Origin: Selaginella moellendorffii
Lineage: Eukaryota; Plantae; Lycopodiophyta
Length of the DNA: 64,000 nucleotides
Assembly (NCBI RefSeq): GCF_000143415.4
Contig: NW_003314313.1
Coordinates: forward strand, 771,430 to 835,429
Direction: 5' to 3'
The translations under genes and the position numbers were made by a program. Each line of letters starts with the position of its first letter. The first letter of the stretch is position 1. A model generated the notes under the pieces. It had not been told where the DNA came from. It saw only the letters and a list, made by a program, of their open reading frames with translations, and did not search any database. This document shows positions 1,961 through 38,922 of this stretch, one piece after another.

Positions 1961-2449
1961 AACAAGGATGGTCGAGACCGACGAACTACCTTATGCCAAC
2001 AATGACGACTCAGATCCTCAAGTCATGGCAGTACAAACCCGAGCACAAATTCGAGCAGAAAAACAACAACAACCGGACAGAGATTCCGGAGATAGTGAAG
2101 AGAAAGGCCCTGAGAGCCTGACAAAACTCCGGGAATGGAAAAAGAAGCAGAAGTTAGCCACCAAGATACAACGGCAACTCGCTCTACAACCACCTGAATT
2201 AGTGATTTTAGACTCCGACAATGAAGCTCAACCATCACCAGCTCGACAACAATGCCAAGACTCAATACCAGAAAACTGATAGACAAATCGTCCAACATCG
2301 ACACTGACACCAGAACACAATTTGGCAAACTTCGACAAAATCTAAGAAGTAGCAGAGACTATCCTCAACCAAAATATTCAGATCACCATTGGTCAACTGC
2401 TGAAGATTGCACCCTACCTCACCAAACAGCTCACCGATCTGACATCTGC

Positions 2450-5400: not shown

Positions 5401-6050
5401 GACACAAAATGTTGACACCATACTATCCTCAAGGCAACGGTCAAGAAGAAGCAACGAACAAAACACTGAAGACCATCCTCAAAAAAGTCATCAACGATTT
5501 AGGCAAAGATTGGGACGACAAACTTCTTGATGTACTTTGGGCCTATCAAAATATGTATAAAGTCACCACCGACATGACGCCATTCAAACTCACCTTCGGA
5601 ACAGAAGCCATCACGCCAATCAAATTCATCATCCCAAGCATGCAAGTCACCATCAAGTATAATCTCGACACCCGACATGCAGTTCAAGAAAGGCTTCAGC
5701 AACTTGAACATCTCGATGAACTCTGACTCAACACCCTCTGGACACTTCATGCCATCCAAAAACAGAGAAAAGCTCGGCACGACCGACAAGCATCCCAGCA
5801 TAACATTCCCAAATACAGCGTCGACGATCATGTTCTCTGGTACCGAGGACCCATCGGCAAACTTGGATGAAAACTCCACACCAACTGGCAAGGACCTTTC
5901 AAAATCATTGAACTATACCCCAACGGCACTGCCAAAGTCAGCACACTCGCTGAAGACTTTACTGAGATCGTCAACCTTAACAAGCTTCAACCATATCACG
6001 TCGACATATTCAGCATCAGCACCTCAGCAAATTTCCGACCCAAACCGACA
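2450..6050 (+). pseudogene. pol (PR-RT-RH-INT) of element 1, disrupted
   Basis: Protease, RT, RNase H and integrase motifs are spread over several frames (ORFs 2693, 3547, 4284, 5133). Confidence 0.93.
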
Positions 6051-6416
6051 AACACCCCAAAACCAACAATCGACACTCACCCCAGCAGACAAACTTTAAC
6101 TCAAATCAATTCGACACAACTCAACTCAACTCAACACGAACTCATCCACCAACTTCAGCAACAAACAGCAGCAAAAATCTCTAAGTCCCAAGCTACCGTT
6201 GGATCAACGCCACCTGAGCAAATATCAACACTTGAACTTGAGTTAACTTCATCAGCAATATCCACCATTGATTTGCAATCAAGCCAAATCAAACCACATC
6301 AATTTCGTCAACAAATCTCTACCATTCATCACCAGCAATCGAGTGCCACATGATCAGCCAACCAACAGTTACAGGTTTCAAGAACCCTAACGGGGTGAGC
6401 ACTTCGACCACAGAAA

Positions 6417-8366: not shown

Positions 8367-8416
8367 CAAGTGATGGAAACTGAATGTTCGCACCGAGGAT
8401 AGTGTCTAGTTCTGTC

Positions 8417-8427
8417 AGGGAGCAGAG
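8417..8427 (+). other. Polypurine tract of element 1
   Basis: AGGGAGCAGAG immediately precedes the LTR start TGTATC. Confidence 0.7.
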
Positions 8428-8721
8428 TGTATCAACCAAAAACCCAGGCTCAGGGGACTCCGACCTTAAACCCAGGGCTATATCGGAGCCATAAATTAAA
8501 TCATGCACAGCATATAATATATGCTAGTAGTTAGAACTGTTAGCCTTTCAAAGGGGGGAATCCGAATTATGGATCCCTATCTCCATTCCATCATTTTCTT
8601 ATCAATTCACAACATTCTTTCACTTGTCCTTCTTCTCAGCCCTTGGAGATTGGGCCATTTTCTCTTTTGTTTTCTTTCTAACAATAGATTTCCAGCGAAG
8701 AGGAGTATTGACACCTCTTCA
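8428..8721 (+). repeat. 3' LTR of element 1 (294 bp)
   Basis: TGTATCAACC...CACCTCTTCA; matches the reverse complement of 23782-24075 and 34077-34369. Confidence 0.95.
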
Positions 8722-9289
8722 ATTGCCAAGCAAGACGAGTGCTGAATATTTGTTTGCGAAGTGCTGATGCGGTGGCTAACATCACACGTCCAAGGTTTGT
8801 GACCTTTAGTTTCCTTGATTATGAATCCATTCGCTTCTTCCGCCATTCCTCTACATTTGGCATGTGCATTGCGCGCTAGGTGATCATCTTCACCCCTGCT
8901 CTTAGCTCGAGAATGGATGAGCTGGATCATCTTTCCACCGATCACTCTCGCTTTGTTTCTTTTTCGTGCGGTGTCACCACGAGAAAGGATTTCGCACTGT
9001 CACAAAGCTGCCGACCATATTGGTTGGTGTTTGTTTTGTGATGCCGATTATCACAAGCTTCTGCAGCAGCAGCTGTCACGCAATCGAATCCCGGCGTACA
9101 AGACGAACAGCTTCATGGCGGATGCGCTGCTGTTGACGATTCCAGCATTACGGATCCCTCGCAGTTCCTAAACTCGGGGCAAGGCTGCTGGATGAAAACA
9201 CTCAGGCAGCAGCGACTGGACTGGAAGAAATTCCTCGGCTGAGGGAGCTGCTCGTGCTCACGCCAGAGGGGATCGGCTTGGAAGTTTTG

Positions 9290-9425
9290 GAAGTGACTGC
9301 AAAAGAAAAAGGAAGATCTCGAGCCACGAAACCATGAATTCCAACCAGCGATGTGACCTTATTGAACCGGGAAGCGGCAGTGCGCACTCGAGTAGCAACT
9401 TTACTTGTCCCTGGAACAGCATCCA
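9290..9425 (-). pseudogene. SKP1-like (ASK20/21) gene fragment
   Basis: GCCxRDK..KLLLE.. exon piece plus retained intron, matching the gene at 41828-43357. Confidence 0.75.
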
Positions 9426-9849
9426 GTTTTTTCTTCTTCGTCCTCTTGGTGGCTGCTACTGTGACCTCTCGGCCAGTGAAGAATGAAACAGGTACGCCTG
9501 TTCTTCAATCTCGATTGAATATGCCTCGCTTGGATTTGATGATCTCTGTGTTTCTTTTGAAACATCATGGTCCATGTCTGCACTCGCTTGCATGTGTGTC
9601 TGTCCAAGCACGTAACCTGATTCATACGTGATTTAAACTTTTTGTCTTTTACAGTGATGGCTAAGATTGCTAATCAGCTGGATTGGTCGTCATTGTCCAA
9701 TTCCACCCCAAAAATTGCCGAACCAGAGGTAAAATAATCCTGTATTTGAAGACAATATTCTTGACATGTATGATCATGTGCTGTCAATCATCTTTGGTGA
9801 TCAGGAGAAGCAAGCCCATGTTGACTACATTTATGATTTTAATCCTTGA
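9425..9849 (+). pseudogene. Phytosulfokine-like precursor, copy 1, 5'-truncated (exons 9425-9491, 9655-9728, 9805-9849)
   Basis: Same exons as 19019-19458, but the promoter and ATG-SRAL codons are replaced by the inverted-duplication junction. Confidence 0.75.
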
Positions 9850-10130: not shown

Positions 10131-10559
10131 CTAGCAGCACTGGAGAACTCCCTCGACGTTCTGGATGCAATCGTCGAGGTTGCGAGTGGAAGAGACGAGA
10201 ACGCCATCCCCGCGGTTGCAACGGGCAGCCACGTTGAGCCCATTGAAGCTGATGTTGATGCATCGTGAGGCAAAGTTGGATGAGCAGTCGAGGACACCAT
10301 TGCTGCTGCCCACGCAATTGTTCACATCGATGGAGGCGTTCCTCCTTTCCATATTGGATGTGCTGCAAATGGCTCTCATCACGGTCGAATTCCTGTCGAA
10401 GGTGATATCAGTGCAGGATCGAGAAAACTGGCAAGCCTGTAAGAGTAAGATATCCAAATTGTGAGCTTCTTGCGGGACAATTGAATGAGAGTTTCTTACC
10501 TGGGTGATGGAGAGGGTCGAGACCAGCATACACAGGAAGAAAACCTCGCGAAATGCCAT
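10131..10559 (-). CDS. Secreted cyanovirin-N homolog (CVNH) lectin, copy 1; exons 10500-10559 and 10131-10436, 121 aa
   Basis: Signal peptide MAFREVFFLCMLVSTLSITQA; 63-nt GT-AG intron; FSRSC...SIDVNNCVGSSNGVL...SNFASRC...NLDDCIQNVEGVL aligns by eye with both cyanovirin-N repeats. Confidence 0.9.
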   Translation of the reverse strand: MAFREVFFLCMLVSTLSITQVRNSHSIVPQEAHNLDILLLQACQFSRSCTDITFDRNSTVMRAICSTSNMERRNASIDVNNCVGSSNGVLDCSSNFASRCINISFNGLNVAARCNRGDGVLVSSTRNLDDCIQNVEGVLQCC

Positions 10560-10642
10560 AATGAGATAGAACAAGAAATAACCAAGAAGAAAATGAGTAA
10601 ACAACTTTAACTAGAGATGAGTTGAGCTCTGGAAAGGCCTTG

Positions 10643-14299: not shown

Positions 14300-14650
14300 T
14301 TGGAACCATAGTCTTCGCTCCCACGCCACCGCTATAGTCTCCAGGGATCCAATCGACATCACAGGTTTGGGAGGGCGATGACGGCTATGGTCTCCATCTG
14401 GAGATGGTGATGGAGTGGCAATGGGATCCCATCGATCCTCGCATGGATTCAATTTCCTGCAGCTCCATCCCCCAATAAGGTAGAGCTTGCTGCCCAGAGC
14501 CTGGCACACGAATCCCCGTGCCTTTTGGGTATCAAAACCTCTTATCGTCCAAGCCCTGTGCGGTGTCTGGCAAATAGTCCATGGGCGATGACCAACTGCG
14601 AAAGGAGCAGCCTGCGAGGATGTGGCAATCACAGGGAAGCGCGCCGGATC
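14300..14650 (-). pseudogene. Kelch-repeat (F-box/kelch-type) fragment
   Basis: RGFVCQALGSKLYLIGGW...EDRWDPI, with the kelch GG..W pattern. Confidence 0.55.
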
Positions 14651-14659
14651 GACCGGGAA

Positions 14660-15095
14660 TGCACATTCTTGTGTAACCTCTTGCTATCACTATATACCCG
14701 ATTTGGGCATATTGGCGAGGCGATCAAGGTGTTTCACTCGATCCAGAATTCCAATCTCTTCTCCTTGAAAATCCTGTTAGGGGCATTTTGCGATGACAAT
14801 CACGTTTCTGAGGATAGAAAAACCTTTGATTCTCTGCAGGAGAGGGACGTGCTGACCTGGACTATGATGGTGATCGCATATGCCCCCATTGGGCATCTTT
14901 CGCGGAAAAGTCACGGGCCGCGCGCAACCAGGTGGAATGCCTCTCGTCCACCGCGAGGTCTTGCTCAATGGATGCTGTCCCAGGGACAAGTAAAGTTGCT
15001 ACTCGAGTACGCACTGCCGCTTCCCGGTCCGATAAGGTCACATTGCTGGTTGGAATTCATGGTTTCGTGGCTCGAGATCTTCCTTTTTCTTCTTT
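14660..15095 (+). pseudogene. PPR fragment fused to SKP1-like fragment
   Basis: FLCNLLLSLYTRFGHIGEAIKVF...RDVLTWTMMVIAY followed by NGCCPRDK / LLEY..RFP. Confidence 0.8.
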
Positions 15096-15439
15096 CAAAA
15101 CTTCCAAACCGATCCCCTCTGGCGTGAGCACGAGCAGCTCCCTCGGCCGAGGAATTTCTTCCAGTCCAGTTGCTGCTGCCTGAGTGTTTTCATCCAGCAG
15201 CCTTGCCCCGATTTCAGGAACCGCGAGGGATCCGTAATGCTGGAATCGTCGACAGCAGCGCATCCGCCATGAAGCTGTTCGTCTTGTACGCCGGGATTCG
15301 ATTGCGTGACAGCTGCTGCCGCAGAAGCTTGTGATAATCGGCATCACAAAACAAACACCAACCAATATCGTCGGCGGCTTTGTGATAGTGCGAAATCCTT
15401 TCTCGTGGCGACACCGCACGAAAAAGAAACAAAGCGAGA

Positions 15440-16400
15440 GTGATCGGTGGAAAGATGATCCAGCTCATCCATTCTCGAGCTACGAGCAGGGGTGAAGACG
15501 ATCACCTAGCGCGCAATGCACACGCCAAATGTAGAGGAATGGCGGAAGAAGCGAATGGATTCATAATCGCGCGCGTCAGAAACCAGGAAACTGAAGGTCA
15601 GGAACCTTGGACGTGTGACGTTAGACACAGCATCAGCACTTCGCAAACAAATATTCAGCACTCGTCTCGCTTGTCCTTTCCCTTTTCCCAGAGTGCTAAC
15701 TTTCACAACCGTTCCATCCAAAGCTTCTCCCACTTTTCTCTCCCAGCCAAATCTGCAAATGCTACCAAAAACCTCGAGTGCTAGCTCACTCTCCACGTTT
15801 GCAACGTATCCGAGCACTAGAACAGTCCACGAGATGACACTGTGCCGGGAGCTGGTGTCGAAAACCATGCGTGCTTCCACCATTCTTCCACAGTATGCGT
15901 ACATTTCCACCAGCGAGCTCGCTACGTGATCATCTTTGCCACTTCTCTTAGCTCAAGGGTGGATTCTCATGCCTTGTTCCAGAGCTTCCAGCTTGATCAT
16001 CTTCCCACCGATGAGTCTCACTTCTTCTCTGATCGCTAGAGCAGAGCAAGCCTCGATCGCTGCGAAGAATGTCCCGGAATCCGGTCCGCAACCCTGGCTT
16101 TCCATCCATGACAAGCCTTCCAGAGCACGAGATTCTTCGCCATTCTCAAGATGAAAGCGTTCCAGGCCACTACATTGTGGCAAGGCATCCTGTCAAACAC
16201 CTTCCTCGCCTCAACCAGGCTGCCACACCTCCCATACATGCCGATCAAGCTGCAAGAAACGTAGGATCGTGGAGCACCCTTCCCCTCTCTAAATCCTTGG
16301 AGCTCCCGCAGGATTTCAACCCCAAAAGGAGCTCCGCTGAGCAGCCTGTGCTGTGACCCAGGCATTGTCCCAGTACGGGTCGAAGGGAATGCATCCATCC
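15440..16400 (-). pseudogene. PLS-type PPR pseudogene (copy without the gypsy insertion)
   Basis: [65 protein letters not shown]; frameshifts. Confidence 0.88.
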
Positions 16401-16519: not shown

Positions 16520-17045
16520 CTCCCACCGATACGATAACACCGTCCGGAGCCTCCACGCTTGCTCGGTACGTGGTAGCGTCGTCGTCTACGTTTGTCACTC
16601 GCCAGTGGATGATCCTCTTTCCTTTGAGCGAAGAGATCGCGATGGAGGGATAGTTGAGATTGCTGGAAGCCATGCGTCGTCGTGTGGAACAGATGGTTTC
16701 AAGTTCGCGAAAGTGGAGACGTTTCGTATTTCCTGCCTCAATCCACACAGGAAGTCTGTGAATTCGGGCACCTTGGCATCGTAGACGAGGCTTGGATTGA
16801 TGTGGTCTCCACCGAAGGTGCCGGAGAGCAATGCTGCGTCTTTGATTGGCTCCCCAGAGTTATCAGTGACAAAACCTGTTGCAAAACAAGAGAAATGAAT
16901 CGATTGTTTTCTTCTGGAAAGAACATAGTGTTACCTGTAGTTACGATTGCCGAATTGATAGCGGCTGGACTCCATTCGGGACGGTATGCCTTGAGCAGTG
17001 CAACGATCTCAGAGACATGCGGACAAGACATGGAAGTTCATAATA
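16520..17045 (-). pseudogene. Subtilisin-like protease C-terminal fragment
   Basis: [32 protein letters not shown]...LNYPSI...RVTNV...YRASVEAPDGVIVSV. Confidence 0.9.
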
Positions 17046-17699: not shown

Positions 17700-18650
17700 G
17701 AGCTGGTATGATCTGGGACTCACTTACAACTCGAGCGCCACGGTCGATCACGTCATCCGAAACGATCCCTCGCTCCTCCTCATGGTGGGCGATCTCACAT
17801 ACTCGGATCAATACATCACCAATGGCACTGGATCGCCCTGCTTTAGCTGTGCACTTCCAGACGCGCCAATCCGGGAGACTTATCATCCCCACTGGGATCA
17901 CTAGGGGAGGTGAGAGAGAGAGAAAGACTATAAATCCGCAATCCAATCCCTGATTTCCTTGCTCCCAGATTCATGGAGGAGGTGCCAACCACGAGATCGA
18001 GCCCCAGGCATTGGGCAAAACATACAAGGCCAGATTCTCGGTGCCTCCTGGATCGAATTCCAGCCTTTAGTTCTCGTTCGATGTCGGCGGCATCCACTTC
18101 CTGATGCTGGGAGGATCGCGTCAACAGGCTCCTCACGCCCTGGATCGTGGCATCCGCCGTGGTACAATAGCTACAGCTCCCACTACCGCGAGGTCGAGTG
18201 CATGCGTCTCGAAATGGAGGAGCTTCTCTACAATGCCGGCGTCGACATTGTCTTCAATGGCCATGTAAATCCCTCTCTCTTCTCGATCTCGACAGGAATC
18301 CTCGGTGTTCTTCCAGGTCCATGCCTTAGAACGAGAGTGGACACGGAGGACGCTGACGATCGCCCCAAGCCTGAGGACAACGTACCCCAATTCGGTGGAG
18401 TTTGTGCTCAAAACTTCGGCTCTGAGCCAGCGGCGAATCAATTCTGCTGGGGCAGGCAGCCGGAATGGAGCGCGCTGCGAGATGGAAGCTTTGGTCACGG
18501 CCTATTGGAGGTAACCTCGAGAGTTCAACCTCTTGATTTTGCTCTTTTTCTCTTTAGGTGAAGAACAATACCCATGCCCTGTGGACGTGGTACCGCAACC
18601 AAGATGTGTATGGTGATAGTCACCTTGGAGACATTGTGAAATCACCGCAG
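17700..18650 (+). pseudogene. Purple acid phosphatase (PAP13/15/23 phytase-type) pseudogene
   Basis: DLGLTYNSSATVDHV..LLMVGDLTYSDQY...APIRETYHPHWD*, HPPWYNSYSSHYREVECMR, VDIVFNGHV, SFGHG; premature stop and deletions. Confidence 0.9.
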
Positions 18651-19018
18651 TGCCGGAACTATCCTGCTTTCCAAGCTGACGAAAGATCGGGTGGAAACAG
18701 TGGAAGTCCCTCCAGGATCTTGGGAGCTCTAGCCATTTTGATGGCAACGCTTCTAGAATTTTGAAAGTGCAGAAGTTAATAAACATTAGCATATGAAAAG
18801 AATTATCGCGAGTGAATTCCAGTACAATTGGAGAGGGAAAAGCTAACTGGAAGTCTGGTTTCCAGCCATCCAGTCAAAACTGCCGCTTTGCATGTCGACG
18901 TGGCGGTTCTTCAGTGGTTGACATTTTCTCGGCAGCATATATACGATATCAACACAAACGCTGATCATATCATCGGTCTCTCTTTGATAGATTTTCTTTG
19001 CAAGAGGAACTCTAGATC

Positions 19019-19458
19019 ATGTCTCGCGCACTAAGTTTTTTCTTCTTCTTCCTCTTGGTGGCTGCTACTGTGACCTCTCGGCCAGTGAAGAATGAAACAG
19101 GTACGCCTGTTCTTCAATCTCGATTGAATATGCCTCGCTTGGATTTGATGATCTCTGTGTTTCTTTTGAAACATCATGGTCCATGTCTGCACTCGCTTGC
19201 ATGTGTGTCTGTCCAAGCACGTAACCTGATTCATACGTGATTTAAACTTTTTGTCTTTTACAGTGATGGCTAAGATTGCTAATCAGCTGGATTGGTCGTC
19301 ATTGTCCAATTCCACCCCAAAAATTGCCGAACCAGAGGTAAAATAATCCTGTATTTGAAGACAATATTCTTGACATGTATGATCATGTGCTGTCAATCAT
19401 CTTTGGTGATCAGGAGAAGCAAGCCCATGTTGACTACATTTATGATTTTAATCCTTGA
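19019..19458 (+). CDS. Phytosulfokine-like secreted peptide precursor, copy 2 (exons 19019-19100, 19264-19337, 19414-19458; 66 aa)
   Basis: GT-AG splicing gives MSRALSFFFFFLLVAATVTSRPVKNETVMAKIANQLDWSSLSNSTPKIAEPEEKQAHVDYIYDFNP*: signal peptide, RP, acidic stretch and a PSK-type AHxDYIY. Confidence 0.8.
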
Positions 19459-19740
19459 TGAAACGGCACATTAATAAGGAGGGATCATAGGCTTTAAAAT
19501 TCTCATAATATACCTTTAATATAAATCGATTTGTCTTTGTAGTATTTTCATTATACAAATTGAAAAAAAGTTGTACAAGTAATATTTTCCAGTCTGTCTT
19601 AAAAGCCCCACAACTTCCGTGAGTAAGTTTTATTGATCAGAACAGCGACACATACGTGCCAAACAAGGAGAGATCATGTGGGAGATCACTCAGTTATTCA
19701 TCTTTCATCATATGGATATAGTTTGATCATCCAAAAGGAT

Positions 19741-20169
19741 CTAGCAGCACTGGAGAACTCCCTCGACGTTCTGGATGCAATCGTCGAGGTTGCGAGTGGA
19801 AGAGACGAGAACGCCATCCCCGCGGTTGCAACGGGCAGCCACGTTGAGCCCATTGAAGCTGATGTTGATGCATCGTGAGGCAAAGTTGGATGAGCAGTCG
19901 AGGACACCATTGCTGCTGCCCACGCAATTGTTCACATCGATGGAGGCGTTCCTCCTTTCCATATTGGATGTGCTGCAAATGGCTCTCATCACGGTCGAAT
20001 TCCTGTCGAAGGTGATATCAGTGCAGGATCGAGAAAACTGGCAAGCCTGTAAGAGTAAGATATCCAAATTGTGAGCTTCTTGCGGGACAATCGAATGAGA
20101 GTTTCTTACCTGGGTGATGGAGAGGGTCGAGACCAGCATACACAGGAAGAAAACCTCGCGAAATGCCAT
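19741..20169 (-). CDS. Secreted CVNH lectin, copy 2 (intron 20047-20109)
   Basis: Protein identical to copy 1. Confidence 0.9.
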   Translation of the reverse strand: MAFREVFFLCMLVSTLSITQVRNSHSIVPQEAHNLDILLLQACQFSRSCTDITFDRNSTVMRAICSTSNMERRNASIDVNNCVGSSNGVLDCSSNFASRCINISFNGLNVAARCNRGDGVLVSSTRNLDDCIQNVEGVLQCC

Positions 20170-20619
20170 AATGAGATAGAACAAGAAATAACCAAGAAGA
20201 AAATGAGTAAACAACTTTAACTAGAGATGAGTTGAGCTCTGGAAAGGCCTTGTTTATATAGTCCTGGGAGCGACGCTTATCTTGACGATTCAGCTAGTAC
20301 ATGACTCCACATTGCGGCTAGAATGCAAAATTTCTACGTGGACTACATTACTATACACGTAAATATTGAAATTTAGCTCAGTTTATGATTTTTCAACGGT
20401 GACATTTTTAGGAGTTTGCGTGTTTCGTTTAATTTGCTAGATTATAAATGGGATCGAAACTTAGACACCCTTTTTGGGGCAAGACCGCTCGAGACATCGA
20501 TCTCTACGTGCCCATAGATAGAATCGCGAAGATTATCCAGTGTGTCCAGCTGGTAGACGTAAAATCGAAAAGCACATAAATTCCTCCAAAGACGAAGGAT
20601 ACTTTATCTTTGCGAGCCA

Positions 20620-21960: not shown

Positions 21961-22794
21961 AGCGTCTACTCGTTAAAGAAGTTTACGAATTGCTTAATTC
22001 CTGCTCGGCAGTGGACAAGGGCTCACGAGCTTCGTGCAGATTCATGGTGGCGTGGATGAAACTGCAGCACAGCACGAGGAGAAGCCAAAATAATGTTTGA
22101 TTGCTAAAAAGGATCAAATCTCAAAAACACAATGCTAGAAGCATCAAATTCATGATCACGGGCATTCTTTTTGTATTGTGAAGAACATTGCTCTTTCAAT
22201 TTGCTTAGGACCACAAACTGCAACTCAAGTCCGTCCACACGGAAGAGCCATCCAGCAGGCTGTCATCCGTCCAATTAAGTAGCTGGTAAGATGCTTCGTT
22301 TTGGACTAATTGAGAAAACTCTCCGTTTTCCCCTTTTTTCCCAGTGGTATTTAGGTCATGTTTAAGGTTCATCGTTGAAAGAACCTAAACGAACTTGGTG
22401 GAGAGAGGTGCGAAGCGTTCTACCTGGGCAGAGTGGACCGGACCGGCCAAGGGGCCAACCCAATTATGAGGGCTTTTCTTTGCGTTAGCAATAAGAGAGT
22501 AGATTTGCTGGGGACAAGAAAGCGAAGCTGCTTGCAACGAGCTAATCAACAATAAAAGAAGCCAGTGATAGTCAATATGTTCAAACAATTCAAAAAATCA
22601 AAGTCCTAAACAACGGGCCAAGGAACTCTCAACGTGAAGGGAAACTCACTGATGTGGACAACGCTGTGTGAATACGAACAAAACTAATGATCATTGAAAG
22701 TGAAGATACTTAGCTTCAGGTTTGAGTGTGTTTCAATTTGTTCTAATTTCTTGTCATTAAGAAGGCTGCTCAACGACGATAAGAACTCAAATGC

Positions 22795-23190
22795 TGCCCG
22801 ATTTGGCCATATTGTCAAGGTGTTTCGATCCAGAATTCCAATGTCTTCTCCTTGAAAATCCTGTTAGGGGCCTTTTGCGATGATAGTCGCGTTTCTGAGG
22901 AGAGAAAAACCTTTTATTCTCTGAAGGAGAGGGACGTGGTGACCTGGACTACGATGGTGATCGCATATGCCCGCATTGGGCATCTTTCGCGGAAAAGTTT
23001 CTCTTCACGGGCCGCGCGCAACCAGGTGGAATGCCTCTCGTCCACCGCAAGGTCTTGCTCAATGGATGCTGTTCCAGGGACAAGTAAAGTTGCTACTCGA
23101 GTGCGCACTGCCGCTTCCCGGTTCAATAAGGTCACATCGCTGGTTGGAATTCATGGTTTCGTGGCTCGAGATTTTCCTTTTTCTTTTGCA
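22795..23190 (+). pseudogene. PPR fragment plus SKP1-like fragment
   Basis: Paralog of 14660-15095 (ERDVVTWTTMVIAYARIGH). Confidence 0.8.
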
Positions 23191-23781
23191 GTCACTTCCA
23201 AAACTTCCAAGCCGATCCCCTCTGGCGTGAGCACGAGCAGCTCCTTCAGCCGAGGAATTTCTTCCAGTCCAGTCGCTGCTGCCTGAGTGTTTTCATCCAG
23301 AAGCCTTGCCCCGATTTTAGGAACCGCGAGGGATCCGTAATGCTGGAATCGTCAACAGCAGCGCATCCGCCATGAAGCTGTTCGTCTTGTACGCCGGGAT
23401 TCGATTGCGTGACAGCTGCTGCTGCAGAAGCTTGTGATAATCGGCATCACAAAACAAACACCAACCAATATGGTCAGCAGCTTTGTGACAGTGCGAAATC
23501 CTTTCTCGTGGTGACACCGCACGAAAAAGAAACAAAGCGAGAGTGATCGGTGGAAAGATGATCCAGCTCATCCATTCTCGAGCTAAGAGCAGGGGTGAAG
23601 ACGATCACCTAGCGCGCAATGCACATGCCAAATGTAGAGGAATGGCGGAAGAAGTGAATGGATTCATAATCACGCACGTCAGAAACCAGGAAACTAAAGG
23701 TCACGAACCTTGGACGTGTGACGTTAGCCACAGCATCAGCACTTCACAAACAAATATTCAGCACTCGTCTCGCTTGGCAAT

Positions 23782-24075
23782 TGAAGAGGTGTCGATACTC
23801 CTCTTCGCTGGAAATCTATTGTTAGAAAGAAAACAAAAGAGAAAATGGCCCGATCTCCAAGGGCTGAGAAGAAGGACAAGTGAAAGAATGTTGTGAATTG
23901 ATAAGAAAATGATGGAATGGAGATAGGGATCCATAATTCGGATTCCCCCCTTTGAAAGGCTAGTGGTTCTAACTGCTAGCATATACTATATGTTGTGCAT
24001 GATTTAATTTATGGCTCCGATGTAGCCCTGGGTTTAAGGTCGGAGTCCCCTGAGCCTGGGTTTTTGGTTGATACA
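23782..24075 (-). repeat. 3' LTR of element 2 (294 bp)
   Basis: Reverse complement of TGTATCAACC...CCTCTTCA. Confidence 0.95.
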
Positions 24076-24138
24076 CTCTGCTCTCTGACAGAACTAAATA
24101 CCATCCTCGGTGCAAACATAGTCAGTTTCCATCGCTTG

Positions 24139-26077
24139 TTATTGCTGCTACTCAAGTCGATAGAGGCGACGTTTTTGCTACGGGAGTGTAAGCTCGTGGT
24201 TAGGGACACTGTCTGGTGGATCTGTCCCATCTTCCTGGAGGTCAGCTACCTCAGCCAGCAGGGTGGTATGATCATCCTCGAGCTTCTGGTAGTGGGTGTT
24301 GAGTTCTTCATATTTGAATTTGTAGGTGAATTCATGAGCTACTGATGGGGTTGATGGCTGCTTGGAGACGATCTTCCTGATGTCCCAGAGGTCAGTGCGG
24401 ATCTGCTTCATCTCTTCGAGCTGAGTATCCAGCCGGTGGTTTAAAGGCTCATAGAATTCCTTCTTGATCGCTCCCCGGGTGTATATGAAGGAGCCTTGCT
24501 TGAGAAGATGTTGTGCAATGTCGGCTGGTGTTGGGAAGTAGTTTGCTTGCTCGTGGTGCATGCGTTGATTGAGGGCTTCAAACAACTTGCGGGTGCAGTA
24601 GCTTGGGTCCCAAAGTTTATCTTCGTACTCCTTCCTGATCTCGTCATAATCACGGCGTACCTGACTCTATGGCTGAGGCATGGCTGCTGCTCCTGCTCCT
24701 GCTCCGTGATCCTGGTGTTTCTCGCTAGGGTTCGCTGTGTTCTTGGTCCCGGGAGTTGAAATTGCTGGAGGCTGAATCTGCTTCGTTGGATGTGGGTGAT
24801 GTGGTCGGGCCAGATTCTTTGAGGTGATTGGAGATGAGCTTTTCAGTTTGATGGTGGATGAACGGCCCAGATGTGGCACTGAAATTAATTTATCCGTTGG
24901 GAAATTTTTCGCTTGGAATTTTGTTGAAGGGGTGGAATTTTTGTGAATGCTGGTCATGGTATTTGCTGGAGGAGGCATGGTTGTGTGTTCTTCAAGTGAT
25001 TGGTGAAGGTAGTCAATGTTTTCTTTTGTGGAACGTGTCGAGGAGGTCGGGGCGTTGAGAATGTTGTTCTCAGCTGGTGGAGAAATTGAGTTCTGGGCGA
25101 TCAGCTGACATTTTCCTTTGGCGATGTTGATGTGTTTGTGAGAAGTTGTTGGTTTTGGGGCTGATTCGAGTGGATGCGGGCTCTGGGGTGAGTGTGGATG
25201 GTGATGTGAGTTGTCTTCATTGTCGCTGATGATGAGGTGTTCTCGGATCAGCGGTTTGGGAGCTGGATTCACTGGTGTTTTGTGTGTGAGGCGGCGGCGA
25301 AGTGGAGTTGAATTCTTGGAGTGTTTGTTGCTGGAGCTGGTGTTGTTGGAGTGAGTTGAGCCTGATTGTTGAGATGCTGGCTTCGGTTTCTTGCTGGGAG
25401 TTGCTCCTTCTGATTCTGACTGTTCTTCAGAGCTGTCACTTTGTTCTGTGGAGTTTGTTTGGGTTGTCCACGGTTGTTTGTTGGGAAGAGCTTGGTGTAG
25501 AGCGATCAGCAGTGGGAATATTACTGTCCGCATGGTCTTCTTGTTGAGTGTGGCAAGGATGGCATGGTCGAGAAGCTTGAGAAGGAGCTCGTGGAGATGA
25601 TGAGCCACGTTCACACATTTGCCGTCGAGTAGAGCTCCGTAGACTGCTGCTGTGCGCTTGCTGATGGTGTGATCTGTTGGGCGAAGCTCGGGCTTTGAGG
25701 CGATCCATATGTTGCTCCTCGATGTCCTCCCATGTGAGTTCATCGGTAATTTTTCGATTGGCCTTGATGATTTGCTGTGGAACTTCTCTTGAAAATTTGA
25801 GCAGTCCCTTGTTGGAGATTTTGAAAATGGAGGCGATTCTTGCTGGGCTGAGGGTGATCTCGTTGGTGCCATCGGTTATGGTGCTGTTCTTGGGGTTGAA
25901 GGAGGCAGCCAGCTTCCTCGCTAGTTTTTGATCAAGGTGTGTTGAAAAGGCCTTGTGGAGGAGCTCAAATCCATGGTCCTTGAGCCAGGTGGCTATGTCG
26001 TTGTTGGGAAGCCTAGGAATATGGTGTATGACGTATTTGAGGCCCTGGGGTGGATGAGCTGGCATCTTTCTCTTCAT
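24139..26077 (-). pseudogene. Extra 3' ORF of element 2 (frameshifted by a small deletion)
   Basis: ORFs 25436-26077, 24667-25872 and 24178-24585 are paralogous to 6417-8366. Confidence 0.6.
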
Positions 26078-26439
26078 TTTCTGTGGTTGAAGCGCTCACC
26101 CTATTAGGGTTCTTGAAACCTGTAACTGTTGGTTGGCTGATCGTGTGGCACTCGATTGCTGGTGATGAATGGTAGAGATTTGTTGACGGAATTGATGTGG
26201 TTTGATTTGGCTTGATTGCAGATCAATGGTGGATATTGCTGATGAAGTTAACTCAAGTTCAAGTGTTGATATTTGCTCAGGTGGCATTGATCCAACGGTA
26301 GCTTGGGACTTAGAGATTTTTGCTGCTGTTTGTTGCTGAAGTTGGTGGATGAGTTCGTGTTGAGTTGAGTTGAGTTGTGTCGAATTGATTTGAGTTAAAG
26401 TTTGTCTGCTGGGGTGAGTGTCGATTGTTGGTTTTGGGG

Positions 26440-29400
26440 TGTTTGTCGGTTTGGGTCGGAAATTTGCTGAGGTGCTGATGCTGAATCTGTCGATGTGATA
26501 TGGTTGAAGCTTGTTAAGGTTGACGATCTCAGTAAAGTCTTCAGCGAGTGTGCTGACTTTGGCAGTGCTGTTGGGGTATAGTTCAATGATTTTGAAAGGT
26601 CCTTGCCAGTTGGTGTGGAGTTTTCGTCCAAGTTTGCCGATGGGTCCTCGGTACCAGAGAACATGATCGTCGACGCTGTATTTGGGTGTTATGCTGGGAT
26701 GCTTTTCGGTCGTGCCGAGCTTTTCTCTGTTTTTGGATCGCATGAAGTGTCCAGAGGGTGTTGAGTCAGAGTTCATCGAGATGTTCAAGTTGCTGAAGCC
26801 TTTCTTGAACTGCATGTCGGGTGTAGAGATTATACTTGACAGTGACTTGCATGCTTGGGATGATGAATTTGATTGGCGTGATGGCTTCTGTTCCGAAGGT
26901 GAGTTTGAATGGCATCATGTCGGTGGTGACTTTATACGTAGTTTGATAGGCCCAAAGTACATCGAGAAGTTTGTCGTCCCAATCTTTGCCTAAATCGTTG
27001 ATGACTTTTTTGAGGATGGTCTTCAGTGTTTTGTTCATTGCTTCTTCTTGACTGTTGCCTTGAGGATAGTATGGTGTCGACATTTTGTGTCAGATTTTGA
27101 ACTCGGTGGCGAGATGTTCGATTGTTTGGTTGATGAAGTGGGTGCCTCTGTCGGTGACGAGTTTGAGTGGTGTGCCGAAACAAGTGATGATATTTTCGTA
27201 GATGAAGGTTGCTGTTGCTTTCGCTGTGGCATGTCGGAGAGGTATTGCTTCGGCCCACTTGGTAGTGTAATTGGTGGTGACGATGATGTACTGATTTTGT
27301 CGACGGGTGCTGACTTGGGGTCCGACGAAGTCGAGTCCCCATTTCTGAAATGGTGCCATTGGGAATGTTGGGTTGAGTTGTTGAGTCTGAGTTTTCGGCG
27401 GTAATCGGTGTCTTTGACATGTGTCGCAGCGTTTGCAGAATTCTTCAGTGTCATGCCAGAGTGTCAGCCACTAGAGGCCGGCTTGAAGAATCTTCCGAGT
27501 TGTGGTGTCAGCGGCAAAGTGTCCGCTGGAAGGTCCATCGTGAGCTTCCTTGATGATTTGAGTTGTGCTTGGTGGCTTGATGCATCGGCAAAGAATGTTT
27601 TCAATTCCTAGTTTGTAGAGAGTGCCTCCGATGACTGAGTATCGTCGGGTTTTAGCAACAAAAGTCTTCTTTTGGTTAGATGTAGTGTACTGATCTGGAA
27701 CTTTTGCTGAGTTCAGGTAACTGAAGACATTGTCGAGCCAGGTTGCTGGTATTGAAACTCGGAATAGGTTTGAGTCGGGTAAGTCGTCGGTAAGTCTTTC
27801 GGGTTTGTCGCCGGTGGTGATCCGGCTGAGATAATCTGCTTGCTCGTGATTTTTGCCGGGTTTGTGGACGATCTCGAAGTTGTATTCTTGTAGTAAAAGG
27901 AACCATCTTGATATTCAACCAGATAGTATCGGCTTGTTGATGAGGTTAAGGAGTGCCTTGTGGTCGACGAAAATTATGACTTTGGTTGACAGTATGTAGT
28001 GTCGGAACTTCTGAAGTGAGTAGATCATGCCGAGAGCTTCTTTCTCGGTGGTGGTGTAATTTCGTTCAGCTGGGTTGAGTAGTCGGGCTGGCGTAGTAGA
28101 TCGGTTGATCTCGGTTGTCGTGTTGAGTTTGGCTGAGAATTGCACCAGTGGCGACGTTGGAAGTGTCGACATGAATGTGGAACTCTTGTGTCCAGTCGGG
28201 CTTGGCAAGGATCGGTGCTGTTGTTATTTTGAGTCGGAGATTGTCGAATGCTTGTTGCTGTTCGGACGTCCATGTCCATTGGGCATCTTGTTTCAGTCCA
28301 TCGGTGAGTGGTTTGGTGATGTGAGCATACTTGTGGATGAATCGTCGGTGATATCCAACTTTGCCGAGGAAGCACCGAAGTTCTTTCTGATTCTTCGGCG
28401 GTTCAAGTTTGGAGATGATGTCAACTTTGTCCTTGTCGATGAGAATGCCGTCTTTGCAGACAACATGGCCGAGAAGTACTCCAGATTTGACAAAGAAAGC
28501 ACATTTGTCGGGGTTGAGTGCTATGTTGTTCTCCTTTCACTTGTTGAGGCATTTCTCCAGGCATTCAAGATGTAGATCTTCCGAGCTGAAAACGCTGAAT
28601 TTGTCCATGAAGTCTCTCATGAAGTCGGTGAGGTAGTCTCAGAAAGTGTTGGTGACGAGCCTTTGGAAGGTGAATGGGGCATTGCAGAGTCCAAAAGGCA
28701 TTCGTCGATAAGCATAGGCTCCCCATGGACTGATGAATGCTGTCTTGTGCTGATCTTCTTCAGCAATGTGAATTTGGTTGTAGCTAGAGAAACCATCGAG
28801 GAAGGAGTACATCTTGTGTCTGGCAACTGCATCAAGAACTTCGTCGGTAAATGGTATTGGGAAGACATCTTTTTTGGTGGCATCATTGAGCTGTTTATAG
28901 TTGATGCAGATTCGAAGTTTGCCGTTTTTGTTCGGCACAACCACCAGTGGTGAAAGCCATATCGGATTCTGAATTGGGTAGATGTACTTGACTTAGAGAA
29001 GCTTGTCGAGTTTTTCTTTACTTGTTCCATCAAATTTGGATTCATCCGGTAGGCTGCTTGTCTTCTTGGTTTTGAGTCTGGAAGAAGGGTGATGGTGTGA
29101 GGGCTGAGTTTTGGCGAAATTCCCTTAAGGTCTCAATAACTCCAAGTGAACAAGTGTTTCTTCTTTCGGAGAAGATTGATGCCTTTGTCTCAAAAACTTG
29201 CCGAGATGTTAGTGGCAAGTACAATGTAGTGTTCATTGCCGTCGTCGGCGAGGCTGACTTTTTTGAGTTTTTGGTCAGCTGGAATTGACGGAATGTAGGC
29301 GACTTTATTGTGGTTGTTGACTGTGAATGCCGGTGGTGCTTCAAGTTTTGTATCTTGAGTGATTGGATTTTTCAGTGCTGATGTAATTAGGGGTCGTTCT

Positions 29401-31749
29401 CGTTGGAAGTCAACGACGATTCGAAATAGGCCGATCTCGGCCAAAGGTTTGAGATCGGGGTAGGCTTTGAGAATTTGTTGTTCTTCATAGTCGTCAAGGC
29501 CATCTTCGAGATTATATTCTTCCAAGTCAATAGGTCGGTTGTGGCTGGACAACGATTTGGTCACTTTTGTTGACATGGTTGTCGGTCCGTCTGGTCCTCG
29601 AAGGATAAGATTGTCATTGGGCCAATCTTGATAAACTTGGGCAGTTCGGAGCCAAGGTCAACCGAGGAGAATTGAGTATCCATCAGTCTGCTCCGGTAGT
29701 TTGAGGACGACATAGTTGACTGGTATTTCGACGCCTTGAATGGTGGTGTTGACTTTTCGGATGATGCCTTTGGGTTGAACAGATCGGTGGTTGGCCATTC
29801 GGACATTGAAAGGTGCTGGGTGGACTGGGCCGATGTTGAGTTGTTGTACAAGACTTTCTTCAATAATATTAACACTGGAGCCGCTGTCAATTATGGCTCC
29901 TCGAACAAGGTGTTTGTCGAGTCGTAGGTCAATTGTTAGAACATCATTGTCACAATCCCCTGGTTGAATCTTAGTTTGAAATATGTCAACAGTTGTCTGT
30001 GTCGAGTTGAGTGTGGACAAGTCTGTCAAAGTGTTGGTCGGTGCAAATGTCAGATCGGTGAGCTGTTTGGTGAGGTAGGGTGCAATCTTCAGCAGTTGGC
30101 CAATGGTGATCTGAATATTTTGGTTGAGGATAGTCTCTGCTACTTCTTAGATTTTGTTGAAGTTTGCCAAATTGTGTTCTGGTGTCAGTGTCGATGTTGG
30201 ACGATTTGTCTGTCAGTTTTCTCGTATTGAGTCTTGGCATTGTTGTCGAGCTGGTGATGGTTGAGCTTCATTGTCGGAGTCTAAAATCACTAATTCGGGT
30301 GGTTGTAGAGCGAGTTGCCATTGTATCTTGGCGGCTAACTTCTGCTTCTTTTTCCATTCCCGGAGTTTTGTTAGGCTCTCAGGGCCTTTCTCTTCACTAT
30401 CTCCGGAATCTCTGTCCGGTTGTTGTTGTTTTTCTGCTTGAATTTGTGCTCGAGTTTGTACTGCCATGACTTGAGGATCTGAGTCGTCATTGTTGGCATA
30501 AGGTAGTTCGTCGGTCTCGACCATCCTTGTTATTGGTGGTTGCTGCTGGTTCTAATCTTGTTGTCGAGGAGGCGGCGGACCAAGTCTTGGCGGACCGCCT
30601 TGGTTTTGAAGTTGAGGTTGCCATGGTCGATTGTTGTAGTTGCCTTGGTAGCCCTGGTCTTGATAACCTTGGCCTTGGTATCTTCGGTTCTGGTATCTTG
30701 GGTATTGTTGGTATCCTTGGTTGTAGTTGTCGCGGTTTGCTAGGTAGTTCTAGTTCAGCGGGTATTGTCGATCGTTGTAGTTGTTTAGCGAGGTTGATCA
30801 TTCCATTGTCGACTCTGGTGTTGGAAGTTGTTTCTCGGTGGTCTCCAATTTGTCGGAGGTGGTGGCTGGTAATTGTCGAAGTATTGATTGGATATGGTTG
30901 TCAAAACTGTTGTCGGGGATAGTTCGAGACTTGTCGAACTTCTGGAGAATTTCGAAATCTGCAAGTCTTGGCGTCATGACCTTCTTTGGTACAGATCTGG
31001 CATTTGGAGATTTGGAGCTTGCAGTCACTTGCCGGATGTCCTTCGTTCTTGCACTTAGTACACCAAATTCCAGATTGAAATTCTTTGATGTCGGCCTTGG
31101 CTTTTCCATTGAGCTTGTTGATTGTTTTCCTGAGTTTCTGAAGTTTTGACTTGGTGCTCTCTCCGAGTTCATCGTCGGAGTCGTCATTGGAACTACTATC
31201 AGAATCTGAGTTATTTGTGTCATCTACTTGTGCTGTCATTTGTCGAGCTTGAACATCTTGAAGGGCTCTTGTGAGTTCGAGGTAAGTGGCAATGTTGATG
31301 TGTGTTGCCACTTCTCAGAGGGATCGTCGGAGGCCTTGCATGTACCATTGGTAAAGTAATGTTTCGGTGGCACTGTTGCCGCATTTGCTGGCATGTCGAG
31401 TGAAGGTTTGAGTGTAGTCATTGATGGATTGACCAGACTTCTGCTTGAGTTTTTGGATCTTGTGAAGTCGTTGGCTTTGAGTGAGGGAAGACTTGAATCG
31501 GTCTACGAGCTTGAGTGCGAGGTCGTCGAAACTTGTATTTTGAGGAAGCATTTGAGCCCATTCGTTGGCTCTCTTTCGAAGGGTACATCGGAAGTAGTAT
31601 GGAAGTTTGGTTGTCTGGCCATTGATTCGAATTGCTTCTCGGAACTGTTCAACATGTTTCTCGGCATCTTCTGACTTCAGACCATGAAATAGTGGATAGG
31701 AGACGTATCTTCCGACAGGTATGTTGGCAACAGCAGTAGTGACTGCCAT
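26440..31749 (-). pseudogene. gag-pol of element 2, disrupted
   Basis: gag 31315-31749, CCHC 30901-31311, protease 29658-30029, RT 28639-28944, integrase 26766-27359. Confidence 0.93.
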
Positions 31750-38492: not shown

Positions 38493-38922
38493 ATGTCTCA
38501 CGCACTAAGTTTTTTCTTCTTCGTCCTCTTGGTGGCTGCTACTGTGACCTCTCGGCCAGTGAAGAATGAAACAGGTACGCCTGTTCTTCAATCTCGATTG
38601 AATATGCGTCGATTGGCTCTGTGTTTCTTTTGAAACATCATGGTCCATGTCTGCACTCGCTTGCATGTGTGTCTGTCCAAGCGTGTAACCTGATTCGTAC
38701 GTGATTTAATCTTTTTGTCTTTTACAGTGATGGCTACGATTGCTAATCAGCTGGATTGGTCGCCATTGTCCAATTCCACCCCAAAAATTGCCGAACCAGA
38801 GGTAAAATAATCCTGTATTTGAAGACAATATTCTTGACATGTATGATCGTGTGTTGTCAATCATCTTTGGTGATCAGGAGCAGCAAGCCCATGTTGACTA
38901 CATTTATGATTTTAATCCTTGA
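38493..38922 (+). CDS. Phytosulfokine-like precursor, copy 3 (exons 38493-38574, 38728-38801, 38878-38922)
   Basis: MSHALSFFFFVLLVAATVTSRPVKNETVMATIANQLDWSPLSNSTPKIAEPEEQQAHVDYIYDFNP*; all splice sites kept. Confidence 0.8.

What the first reader, a model, noticed from the sequence alone, without database searches (positions are those of the whole stretch)
19019..19458. Hidden phytosulfokine-like peptide gene with a non-canonical YIYDF core
Seen: three small exons joined by canonical GT-AG introns (163 and 76 nt) encode a 66-aa protein. It has a hydrophobic signal peptide, RP, an acidic stretch (EPEE) and a C-terminal AHVDYIYDFNP*. The ORF track misses it. Known: PSK precursors end in AHxDYIYTQ..P, and Asp-Tyr is the tyrosine-sulfation signal; the variants I know are YIYTQ, YVYTQ, YIYTN and YVYTN. 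Inference: this is a new sulfated-peptide variant (YIYDF or longer). It also lacks the Cys pair and dibasic site usually found upstream. Copies 2 and 3 differ at 5 residues (R3H, F11V, K31T, S40P, K54Q), none of them in the terminal motif.
Basis: partly seen in the sequence, partly recalled or inferred. Interest (0 to 1): 0.9.

Follow-up and report, generated by a model that had tools for sequence, protein, structure and literature searches.

The report
Spikemoss phytosulfokine-like secreted peptide gene family
A small, mis-annotated three-exon gene in the spikemoss Selaginella moellendorffii is transcribed and spliced as predicted and encodes a secreted mini-protein ending in a motif that looks like the plant growth hormone phytosulfokine, but whether it is a true relative or a working hormone is not yet shown.

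Summary
Exons 19019-19100, 19264-19337 and 19414-19458, joined by GT-AG introns of 163 and 76 nt, give a 66-aa protein. It has a signal-peptide-like N-terminus, no Cys, and the C-terminus AHVDYIYDFNP.

RNA contigs from one public run carry both predicted junctions. They come from an allelic or paralogous copy on another scaffold, not from copy 2 itself.

The genome is Selaginella moellendorffii. I found the gene at 11 places on five scaffolds of its two-haplotype assembly, always tail-to-tail with a secreted cyanovirin-N lectin gene. The scan's first readers had also flagged YIYDF copies on other pieces of this genome. The one existing annotation (SELMODRAFT_409681) joins exons 1-2 to a spurious exon antisense to the lectin.

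The phytosulfokine (PSK) reading is only partly supported:
- **For:** AHxDYIY in a real secreted precursor's C-terminus is very unlikely by chance.
- **Against membership:** the Pfam PSK score is below threshold (10.6 vs 25 bits), TQ is replaced by DF, and the Cys pair is absent.
- **Against function:** no homolog was found outside this species, the copies evolve near-neutrally, 4 of 10 distinct copies are disabled, and expression is rare.

Verdict: a real, unannotated gene family and a plausible new PSK-like variant, with function unproven.

The parts
18836..19018 (+). 5' leader and promoter-proximal region. It is among the better-conserved parts across copies and contains a 9-codon upstream ORF starting at the ATG at 18892.
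   Evidence: An X1 RNA contig covers 18836-19100 and X2 contigs cover 18774-19036. The 5' flank diverges 3.7% from the L001 copy, against 8-9% for introns.
19019..19100 (+). Copy 2, exon 1: start codon, signal-peptide-like region, RPVKNET.
   Evidence: The joint 19100|19264 is seen in an RNA contig.
19101..19263 (+). Copy 2, intron 1 (GT..AG, 163 nt).
   Evidence: It is skipped in an X1 contig (joints table: skips 163, GT..AG, cut +4).
19264..19337 (+). Copy 2, exon 2: variable propeptide with the NST sequon and EPE.
   Evidence: X1 contig record 3 spans exon 1, exon 2 and exon 3.
19338..19413 (+). Copy 2, intron 2 (GT..AG, 76 nt).
   Evidence: The X1 loose end at 19338 continues with exon 3 sequence.
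19414..19458 (+). Copy 2, exon 3: EKQAHVDYIYDFNP plus the stop codon. This holds the PSK-like motif.
19459..19690 (+). 3' UTR. It converges on, and overlaps, the 3' end of the cyanovirin-N homolog (CVNH) gene on the other strand.
   Evidence: X1 contig record 4 runs from 19412 to 19690. CVNH transcripts end at 19617-19678 in the stranded run X9.
38493..38922 (+). Copy 3, intact. Exons are 38493-38574, 38728-38801 and 38878-38922. It differs from copy 2 at R3H, F11V, K31T, S40P and K54Q.
9425..9849 (+). Copy 1, 5'-truncated relic. It has an exon 1 remnant at 9425-9491, exon 2 at 9655-9728 and exon 3 at 9805-9849, but no ATG. The breakpoint abuts an inverted 9.4-kb duplication.
19617..20215 (-). 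Neighbouring gene in the same duplicated cassette: a secreted 121-aa cyanovirin-N homolog with a 63-nt intron at 20046-20108. It is highly expressed.
   Evidence: Pfam CVNH E = 3.4e-20.

Best explanation
This is one member of a small, recently amplified family of three-exon genes in Selaginella moellendorffii. The genes are unannotated or mis-annotated and encode 62-66-aa secreted prepropeptides.

Shown: the gene is transcribed and spliced exactly as modelled. The product starts with a signal-peptide-like segment and ends in QAHVDYIYDF(N/K)P.

Inferred, by analogy with phytosulfokine precursors (AH-x-D|YIYTQ): after signal-peptide removal, tyrosylprotein sulfotransferase, which this species has according to PMC8462819, would sulfate Tyr59 (preceded by Asp, with EPEE upstream) and probably Tyr61. 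An Asp-directed subtilase would then cut after Asp58. The result would be a short sulfated peptide beginning YIY. It could be YIYD if the second Asp is also used as a cleavage site, or YIYDF, or YIYDFNP. This peptide would act as an extracellular signal through a receptor kinase with a leucine-rich-repeat ectodomain.

The family would then be a lycophyte variant of the PSK type in which the conserved half (AHxDYIY) is kept and the C-terminal two residues differ.
For: Gene model and splicing. In one search, an X1 RNA contig of 129 nt joins exon 1, exon 2 and exon 3 at 19100|19264 and 19337|19414. Its six sequence differences from copy 2 match the copy on GL377695.1 (L008), so it comes from this genome's own family.

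Secretory architecture.

Motif. The Pfam PSK model aligns residues 55-62 to its core positions 75-82 of 88. AH.DY[IV]Y is expected about 0.8 times in a six-frame translation of the whole 212-Mb assembly. Its occurrence in frame at the C-terminus of an RNA-verified secreted precursor is therefore very unlikely by chance.

Family. Eleven places on five scaffolds all keep QAHVDYIYDF[N/K]P followed by a stop. They comprise 10 distinct copies, one of them held as two assembly entries that look allelic. Six copies have intact reading frames, and the only indel among them is in frame (12 nt).

Processing precedent. AtPSK1 is cut as AHTD|YIYTQ|DLNL by SBT3.8, and tomato PSKs are released by an Asp-specific phytaspase (PMC13157962). 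TPST is present in S. moellendorffii (PMC8462819).
Against: - The Pfam PSK score is 10.6 bits against a cutoff of 25.
- Thr4-Gln5 of PSK are replaced by Asp-Phe, there is no Cys pair, and the precursor is shorter than the 80-120 aa quoted for PSK (PMC10796568).
- No homolog was found outside this species: 5.8 billion clustered proteins, 1.84 billion representatives read by phmmer and JGI metagenome DNA. Small unannotated genes are, however, rarely present in those collections.
- Between copies pN/pS is 0.5-1.2. The motif has 2 of 33 variable sites, not significantly fewer than non-coding DNA.
- Four of 10 distinct copies are disabled or damaged. Copy 1 is truncated, L002 has a frameshift, L009 has lost an intron acceptor, and in L001 the intron-2 acceptor CAG has become CAC.
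- Expression is rare. There were zero reads over the gene in the stranded run X9 while the neighbouring gene had depths of 100-700, and about 0.00-0.01 of the sampled words were held in 12 other RNA runs.
- Sulfation, cleavage and a receptor were not tested.
Confidence: 0.5

Rival explanations
1. The family is a real, lineage-specific secreted small protein or peptide that is not a phytosulfokine relative. The AHVDYIY stretch would be convergent or coincidental. The product would work either as an unprocessed 46-aa glycoprotein (sequons NET and NST) or as a different kind of peptide, perhaps linked to defence together with the co-amplified cyanovirin-N lectin.
For: - Pfam PSK is below threshold, TQ is replaced by DF, there is no Cys pair, and the protein is only 66 aa.
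- No homologs were found in other species.
- The gene sits tail-to-tail with CVNH at 10 of the 11 places and beside a CVNH remnant at the eleventh, and the two were duplicated together.
- Evolution is fast and near-neutral, as in many young secreted-protein families.
Against: By my estimate, a six-residue match to the PSK hallmark (A-H-x-D-Y-I-Y) would fall by chance in the C-terminal dozen residues of a small secreted protein about 1e-5 to 1e-4 times per genome. This uses the per-position frequency. The Asp-Tyr pair, the acidic residues upstream and the position a few residues from the stop are just what PSK precursors have (PMC10796568, PMC13157962).
Confidence: 0.3
2. The family is transcribed but functionless: a young open reading frame carried along in a segmentally duplicated, decaying region, drifting neutrally towards pseudogenes.
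For: - pN/pS is about 0.5-1.2, and there are 5 non-synonymous and 0 synonymous changes between copies 2 and 3.
- Four of 10 distinct copies are damaged.
- The surrounding DNA is full of gene fragments: a subtilase C-terminal piece, a purple-acid-phosphatase C-terminal piece and PPR pieces.
- RNA signal is very low or absent in most runs.
Against: Six copies keep an intact frame, and the only indel among them is in frame. Both introns are spliced precisely. The PSK-like motif in frame behind a signal peptide is hard to get from a random ORF. Near-neutral evolution of propeptides is normal for peptide-hormone precursors (general knowledge of the field, stated also in PMC8462819).
Confidence: 0.15
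3. The existing annotation is right. The real product would be the 113-aa SELMODRAFT_409681-type protein, in which exon 2 is spliced to a downstream + strand exon instead of the YIYDF exon.
For: The model exists in GenBank and UniRef. At that locus (L001) the normal intron-2 acceptor is mutated from CAG to CAC.
Against: The alternative exon is the antisense strand of a cyanovirin-N gene remnant and has no Pfam domain. In the window, stranded reads show that this region is transcribed from the opposite strand, and no joint from 19337 to about 19738 was seen. RNA contigs instead join exon 2 to the YIYDF exon.
Confidence: 0.03

Closest known systems
Phytosulfokine (PSK) precursors, Pfam PF06404: PSK-alpha YIYTQ, gamma YVYTQ, delta YIYTN, epsilon YVYTN
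   Same: [quoted passage not shown] Both share Ala-His-x-Asp directly before Tyr-Ile-Tyr, and Asp-Tyr is the sulfation and cleavage context. Both occur as small multigene families.
   Different: Positions 4-5 are Asp-Phe instead of Thr-Gln or Thr-Asn. There is no Cys pair and no dibasic site. The precursor is 62-66 aa rather than 80-120 aa. The gene has three exons. The Pfam score is below the gathering threshold. It is found in a lycophyte, where PSK has not been reported. One review states that no PSK has been found in 'basal plants' (PMC10796568). Furumizu et al. list putative PSKs only for P. patens, M. polymorpha (YIYTSQ, lacking the Asp) and P. abies (PMC8462819).
Putative bryophyte PSK-like genes (MpPSK YIYTSQ, P. 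patens) of Furumizu et al. 2021
   Same: These are also non-seed-plant candidates found by motif search only, with a non-canonical core and no functional test.
   Different: The bryophyte candidates lack the Asp before the first Tyr (PMC8462819). The Selaginella family keeps AHxD-Y but changes the residues after YIY.
Other Asp-Tyr sulfated plant peptides (PSY, RGF/GLV/CLEL, CIF/TWS1)
   Same: They are secreted precursors with a DY sulfation motif near the C-terminus and depend on TPST.
   Different: Those mature peptides are 13-21 or more residues long and Pro-rich, with HN or similar ends (PMC8462819, Table 1). Here only six residues (IYDFNP) follow DY and there is a single Pro, so it does not fit them.

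Membership tests
Phytosulfokine precursor (PF06404) | N-terminal secretory signal peptide | tested here: met
   The n-region is MSR, the hydrophobic core has a Kyte-Doolittle 9-mer mean up to 3.07, and small residues TVTS precede RP. This was judged by hydropathy and inspection, because no SignalP was available.
Phytosulfokine precursor (PF06404) | Pentapeptide Y-[IV]-Y-T-[QN] near the C-terminus | tested here: not met
   The sequence is Y-I-Y-D-F, 3 residues before the stop. The first three positions match and the last two do not. All 11 places have DF.
Phytosulfokine precursor (PF06404) | Asp directly before the first Tyr, in the conserved (A/L)H-x-D context | tested here: met
   AHVD-Y is present at every one of the 11 places. 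For comparison, AtPSK1 has AHTD|YIYTQ (PMC13157962).
Phytosulfokine precursor (PF06404) | Score at or above the Pfam gathering threshold | tested here: not met
   The score is 10.6 bits against 25, with E = 1.3. Only residues 55-62 align, to profile positions 75-82 of 88.
Phytosulfokine precursor (PF06404) | Conserved Cys pair upstream of the PSK domain, and a precursor of 80-120 aa | tested here: not met
   There is no Cys in any intact copy, and the length is 62-66 aa. The 80-120 aa length is quoted from PMC10796568.
Phytosulfokine precursor (PF06404) | Conservation of the motif across species (orthologs) | tested here: inconclusive
   The only hit in 5.8 billion and 1.84 billion protein sets is the S. 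moellendorffii paralog model. Metagenome DNA gave 0 matches. Other lycophyte genomes could not be searched with these tools.
Phytosulfokine precursor (PF06404) | Tyr O-sulfation by TPST and proteolytic release of a short mature peptide | not testable with these tools
   This needs peptidomics or enzyme assays. TPST presence in the species is taken from PMC8462819.
Phytosulfokine precursor (PF06404) | Perception by a PSKR-type LRR-RLK (subfamily Xb, island domain) | not tested
   I had no receptor sequence to use as a query. The papers I read did not state whether S. moellendorffii has a PSKR ortholog.
PSY / RGF / CIF sulfated peptides | DY followed by a 13-21-residue Pro-rich peptide with a family-specific end (for example PPxHN) | tested here: not met
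   Only IYDFNP follows DY before the stop.

The most novel reading that the evidence does not exclude
The YIYDF family is the lycophyte ortholog of phytosulfokine. It would be a disulfated YIY-core peptide, released by Asp-directed cleavage and sensed by a PSKR-clade receptor. That would place the AHxD-YIY precursor type at the base of vascular plants, before seed plants. It would also show that only the sulfated YIY core and its Asp context are ancestral, while positions 4-5 co-evolve with the receptor.
Probability: 0.3. Interest if true: 0.75.

Novelty: new variant of a known kind. Interest (0 to 1): 0.55.

Why it matters
Where phytosulfokine signalling began is unsettled.
- One review says no PSK exists outside seed plants (PMC10796568).
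- A 2026 survey calls PSK a vascular-plant innovation (PMC13091385).
- The only non-seed candidates, in a moss and a liverwort, lack the Asp needed for sulfation and cleavage (PMC8462819).

A transcribed lycophyte gene family that keeps the full AH-x-Asp-Tyr-Ile-Tyr context but changes the last two residues gives a concrete peptide that can be synthesised. It can be used to test when the ligand arose, which residues the receptor really needs, and whether Asp-specific processing is ancient. It also corrects a wrong gene model in the reference annotation. If the family turns out to be a drifting orphan, it becomes a warning about calling hormones from five-residue motifs.

Tried and rejected
- **Rfam on the whole window:** no RNA family found.
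- **Bacterial promoter and terminator scan:** not meaningful for a plant gene and ignored.
- **Protein searches with the 66-aa product:** only the mis-annotated paralog P0001 is a real relative. P0002 and P0003 are long proteins (1566 and 751 aa) matching short stretches, and I treated them as compositional hits.
- **Degenerate DNA pattern for AHxDYIYDF(N/K)P in JGI metagenomes:** no matches.
- **Paper search for YIYDF:** one unrelated Chagas-antigen paper.
- **Second run search with exon 3:** only small DNA runs of one sample of the same organism, so no other species.
- **Literature on a PSKR ortholog in Selaginella:** no clear statement either way.
- **Selection tests on the paralogs:** too little divergence. 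A first test that counted gap columns gave p = 2e-6. I rejected it as an artefact of indel columns. The ungapped test gives p = 0.40.
- **Depth 2797 of the exon 3 contig in X1:** I first read this as high expression and rejected that reading. Contig depth is a mean over the whole contig, and this contig runs into the 3' end of the very highly expressed CVNH gene. Exons 1-2 have depth 10-19.
- **Subtilase fragment in the cassette as a dedicated processing enzyme:** rejected, because it is only the last 44 or so positions of the catalytic domain.

Full report
**1. What is in the sequence.**
The three-exon model is exact.
- Exon 1 is 19019-19100, exon 2 is 19264-19337 and exon 3 is 19414-19458.
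- The introns are 163 and 76 nt, both GT..AG, and the frame is preserved. The product is 66 aa.
- It begins with a typical secretory leader: MSR, a Phe/Leu/Val-rich core and TVTS before RP.
- It has two N-glycosylation sequons (NET, NST), an acidic EPEE stretch and no cysteine, and it ends in QAHVDYIYDFNP.
- The motif-coding DNA occurs three times in the window and never in shuffles.
- Copy 1 is not a gene. Its homology starts at 9425, in codon 6. There it abuts an inverted 9.4-kb duplicate of 23063-32483 (97.2% identity), so it has no start codon and no promoter.

**2. Is it transcribed and spliced as modelled?**
Yes, for the family. Reads and contigs of four runs were laid on 18600-20400.
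- Run X1 behaves as RNA: contigs lack introns and depth ranges from 0 to over 300,000.
- One 129-nt X1 contig contains the end of exon 1, all of exon 2 and the start of exon 3. The joint table gives 19096 to 19260, 'skips 163, GT..AG, cut +4', which is 19100|19264. The loose end after 19337/8 reads AGCAGCAAGCCCATGTCGACTACA, which is exon 3.
- The six differences of these contigs from copy 2 are at 18917, 18923, 18941, 18976, 19049 and 19299. Together with CAG and GTC in exon 3, they all match the copy on scaffold GL377695.1 (L008).
- So the RNA comes from that allele or paralog of the same genome. The expressed copy is therefore not proven to be copy 2.
- A second X1 contig joins exon 1 to 'AG' plus exon 3. 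This is an in-frame isoform that drops all but the last two bases of exon 2 and keeps the C-terminal motif.
- Expression is low or restricted. X9, a stranded RNA-seq run of which 12% was read, has zero reads from 18783 to 19514, while the neighbouring gene reaches depths of 100-700. Twelve other RNA runs hold 0.00-0.01 of the sampled words.
- The depth of 2797 for the exon 3 contig is a contig-wide mean, inflated by its overlap with the neighbour's 3' end. Exons 1-2 have depth 10-19.

**3. Which genome, and how is it annotated?**
The only database relative is SELMODRAFT_409681 of Selaginella moellendorffii.
- It is 113 aa and 71-81% identical over exons 1-2.
- Its locus (L001, GL377576.1) has the YIYDF exon in place at 10406-10450. 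The annotated model instead joins exon 2 to a + strand exon that is the antisense of a truncated cyanovirin-N gene and has no Pfam domain.
- In the window that region is transcribed from the minus strand only, and no such joint was seen. The family is therefore unannotated or mis-annotated.

**4. The family.**
I used the neighbouring cyanovirin-N homolog (CVNH) gene as a handle and fetched nine more loci.
- The window is GL377617.1. L004, L005 and L006 correspond to copies 3, 2 and 1, and L007 is a fourth copy outside the window.
- L008, L009 and L010 lie on GL377695.1. L008 shares the Skp1 neighbour with copy 3, so it is probably the other haplotype.
- L002 lies on GL377581.1.
- L003 (GL377667.1) and L001 share purple-acid-phosphatase and cytochrome c neighbours and look like the two haplotypes of a parental locus.
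- Together with L001 that makes 11 places on five scaffolds. All carry QAHVDYIYDF(N/K)P followed by a stop, and all lie tail-to-tail with CVNH or, in L001, its remnant.
- Counting L001 and L003 as one, these are 10 distinct copies. Six are intact: copy 2, copy 3, L007, L008, L010 and L003. L003 has N65K and an in-frame 12-nt deletion.
- Four are damaged: copy 1 (truncated), L002 (1-nt frameshift in exon 2), L009 (10-nt deletion removing the intron-1 acceptor) and L001 (intron-2 acceptor CAG changed to CAC, with an AG 3 nt downstream that would keep the frame).

**5. Is there selection?**
The copies are too young to tell.
- pN/pS between intact copies is 0.5-1.2.
- Copies 2 and 3 differ by five non-synonymous and no synonymous changes.
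- Among ungapped columns the motif has 2 of 33 variable sites (one synonymous, one N65K). Non-coding DNA has 13.2% and the rest of the CDS 12%, giving p = 0.40 and p = 0.54.
- The invariance of the motif between copies 2 and 3 means nothing, because the 250 nt after the stop codon are identical too.
- Near-neutral propeptides are usual for peptide-hormone precursors, but they are equally what a drifting ORF would show.

**6. Is it phytosulfokine-like?**
*In favour:*
- The Pfam PSK model aligns to exactly residues 55-62 (QAHVDYIY), at its core positions 75-82 of 88.
- PSK precursors are cut as AHTD|YIYTQ (AtPSK1), and Asp-specific subtilases release PSK (PMC13157962). Here the context is AHVD|YIYD|FNP.
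- From the window's six-frame amino-acid frequencies, AH.DY[IV]Y is expected about 0.8 times in the 212-Mb assembly. The assembly size is from my own knowledge of the published genome.
- For that one chance motif to lie in frame, four residues from a stop, behind two precisely spliced introns and a signal peptide, is very improbable. So the resemblance reflects descent or convergence, not noise.

*Against membership:*
- The score is 10.6 bits against a gathering score of 25.
- Thr-Gln is replaced by Asp-Phe, the Cys pair is absent, and the precursor is shorter than the 80-120 aa given for PSK (PMC10796568).

*Cross-species conservation could not be tested.* Protein collections and metagenome DNA gave nothing outside S. 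moellendorffii, and the tools cannot search other lycophyte genomes.

**7. Most likely mechanism (inferred).**
- The product is secreted.
- TPST sulfates Tyr59 (Asp at -1, acidic residues upstream) and probably Tyr61 (Asp at +1).
- An Asp-directed cut after Asp58 releases a short sulfated peptide starting YIY.
- A second Asp-directed cut after Asp62 would give a YIYD tetrapeptide. Otherwise the product is YIYDF or YIYDFNP.
- From memory of early structure-activity work on PSK (not checked here), the sulfated N-terminal tripeptide is the active core. That would fit a family that conserves YIY and varies the tail.
- A receptor of the PSKR/PSY1R clade is the natural candidate but was not examined.

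**8. Literature position.**
- Furumizu et al. (PMC8462819) report putative PSKs only for P. patens, M. polymorpha (YIYTSQ, no Asp) and P. abies. They state that TPST is present in S. moellendorffii.
- Li et al. (PMC10796568) state that no PSK has been found in 'basal plants'.
- PMC13091385 treats PSK as a vascular-plant innovation.
- No paper in the library contains YIYDF in this sense.
- The scan's first readers had flagged the same kind of gene on other pieces of this genome, but none had been followed up.

**9. Verdict.**
The gene family is real, spliced as predicted and mis-annotated. The PSK-like reading is plausible but rests on a seven-residue motif plus architecture. Several defining features were tested and not met, so I file it as a possible new variant of the PSK kind, not as a member. 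My probabilities are about 0.5 for a sulfated PSK-like signal, 0.3 for an unrelated lineage-specific secreted product, 0.15 for a functionless young ORF and 0.03 for the annotated model.

Noticed in passing
L001:10001-10968 (GL377576.1), protein P0001: The GenBank model SELMODRAFT_409681 (113 aa; the UniRef name begins 'Pectinesterase inhib...') is a chimera. It joins exons 1-2 of a YIYDF gene to an exon that is the antisense of a truncated cyanovirin-N gene. It has no Pfam domain.
   Followed up: yes
window 1-9425 versus 23063-32483: This is a 9.4-kb inverted duplication (97.2% identity) with strong, opposite GC and AT skew (about 0.3 either way). One edge lies exactly at the breakpoint inside exon 1 of copy 1. 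What the repeated 9.4 kb encodes was not examined.
   Followed up: partly
window 19036 joined to the reverse complement of 22711-22686 (RNA contig of run X2): A 151-nt RNA contig carries the 5' leader and the first 18 nt of the CDS, fused to the reverse complement of 22686-22711. This is the kind of junction expected at the other end of the rearrangement that truncated copy 1. That junction is not present in this window.
   Followed up: partly
window 19100 then 'AG' then exon 3 (X1 contig): This is an in-frame isoform or paralog transcript. Exon 1 is followed by only the last two bases of exon 2 and then exon 3. It would give a 42-aa precursor that still ends in the YIYDF motif.
   Followed up: no
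window 19617-20215 (-), also 10131-10604 and 39205-39678: A secreted 121-aa cyanovirin-N homolog (Pfam CVNH, E = 3.4e-20) with one 63-nt intron. It is very highly expressed (depths of 100-700 in 12% of one run) and converges on the YIYDF gene, with overlapping 3' ends. S. moellendorffii has at least 10 such genes on five scaffolds.
   Followed up: partly
window 16738-17031 (-); L007:6077-6409; L010:6199-6429: A short subtilase (Peptidase_S8) fragment, covering only profile positions about 240-284 of 288, lies about 2 kb upstream of the peptide gene in several cassettes. It is a gene relic, not a working protease. The coincidence with a subtilase-processed peptide type is noted and not interpreted.
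   Followed up: partly
window 17959-18561 (+), 14525-15127 (+), 15506-16398 (-): There is a purple-acid-phosphatase C-terminal fragment just upstream of the peptide gene (weak, E = 0.0045), and there are PPR fragments further upstream. At the L001/L003 locus a full 550-aa phosphatase gene sits in that position. This suggests the cassette was copied from there, starting inside the phosphatase gene.
   Followed up: partly
window 18892-18921: A 9-codon upstream ORF (ATG TCG ACG ... TGA) lies in the transcribed 5' leader and is kept in the expressed L008 copy.
   Followed up: no
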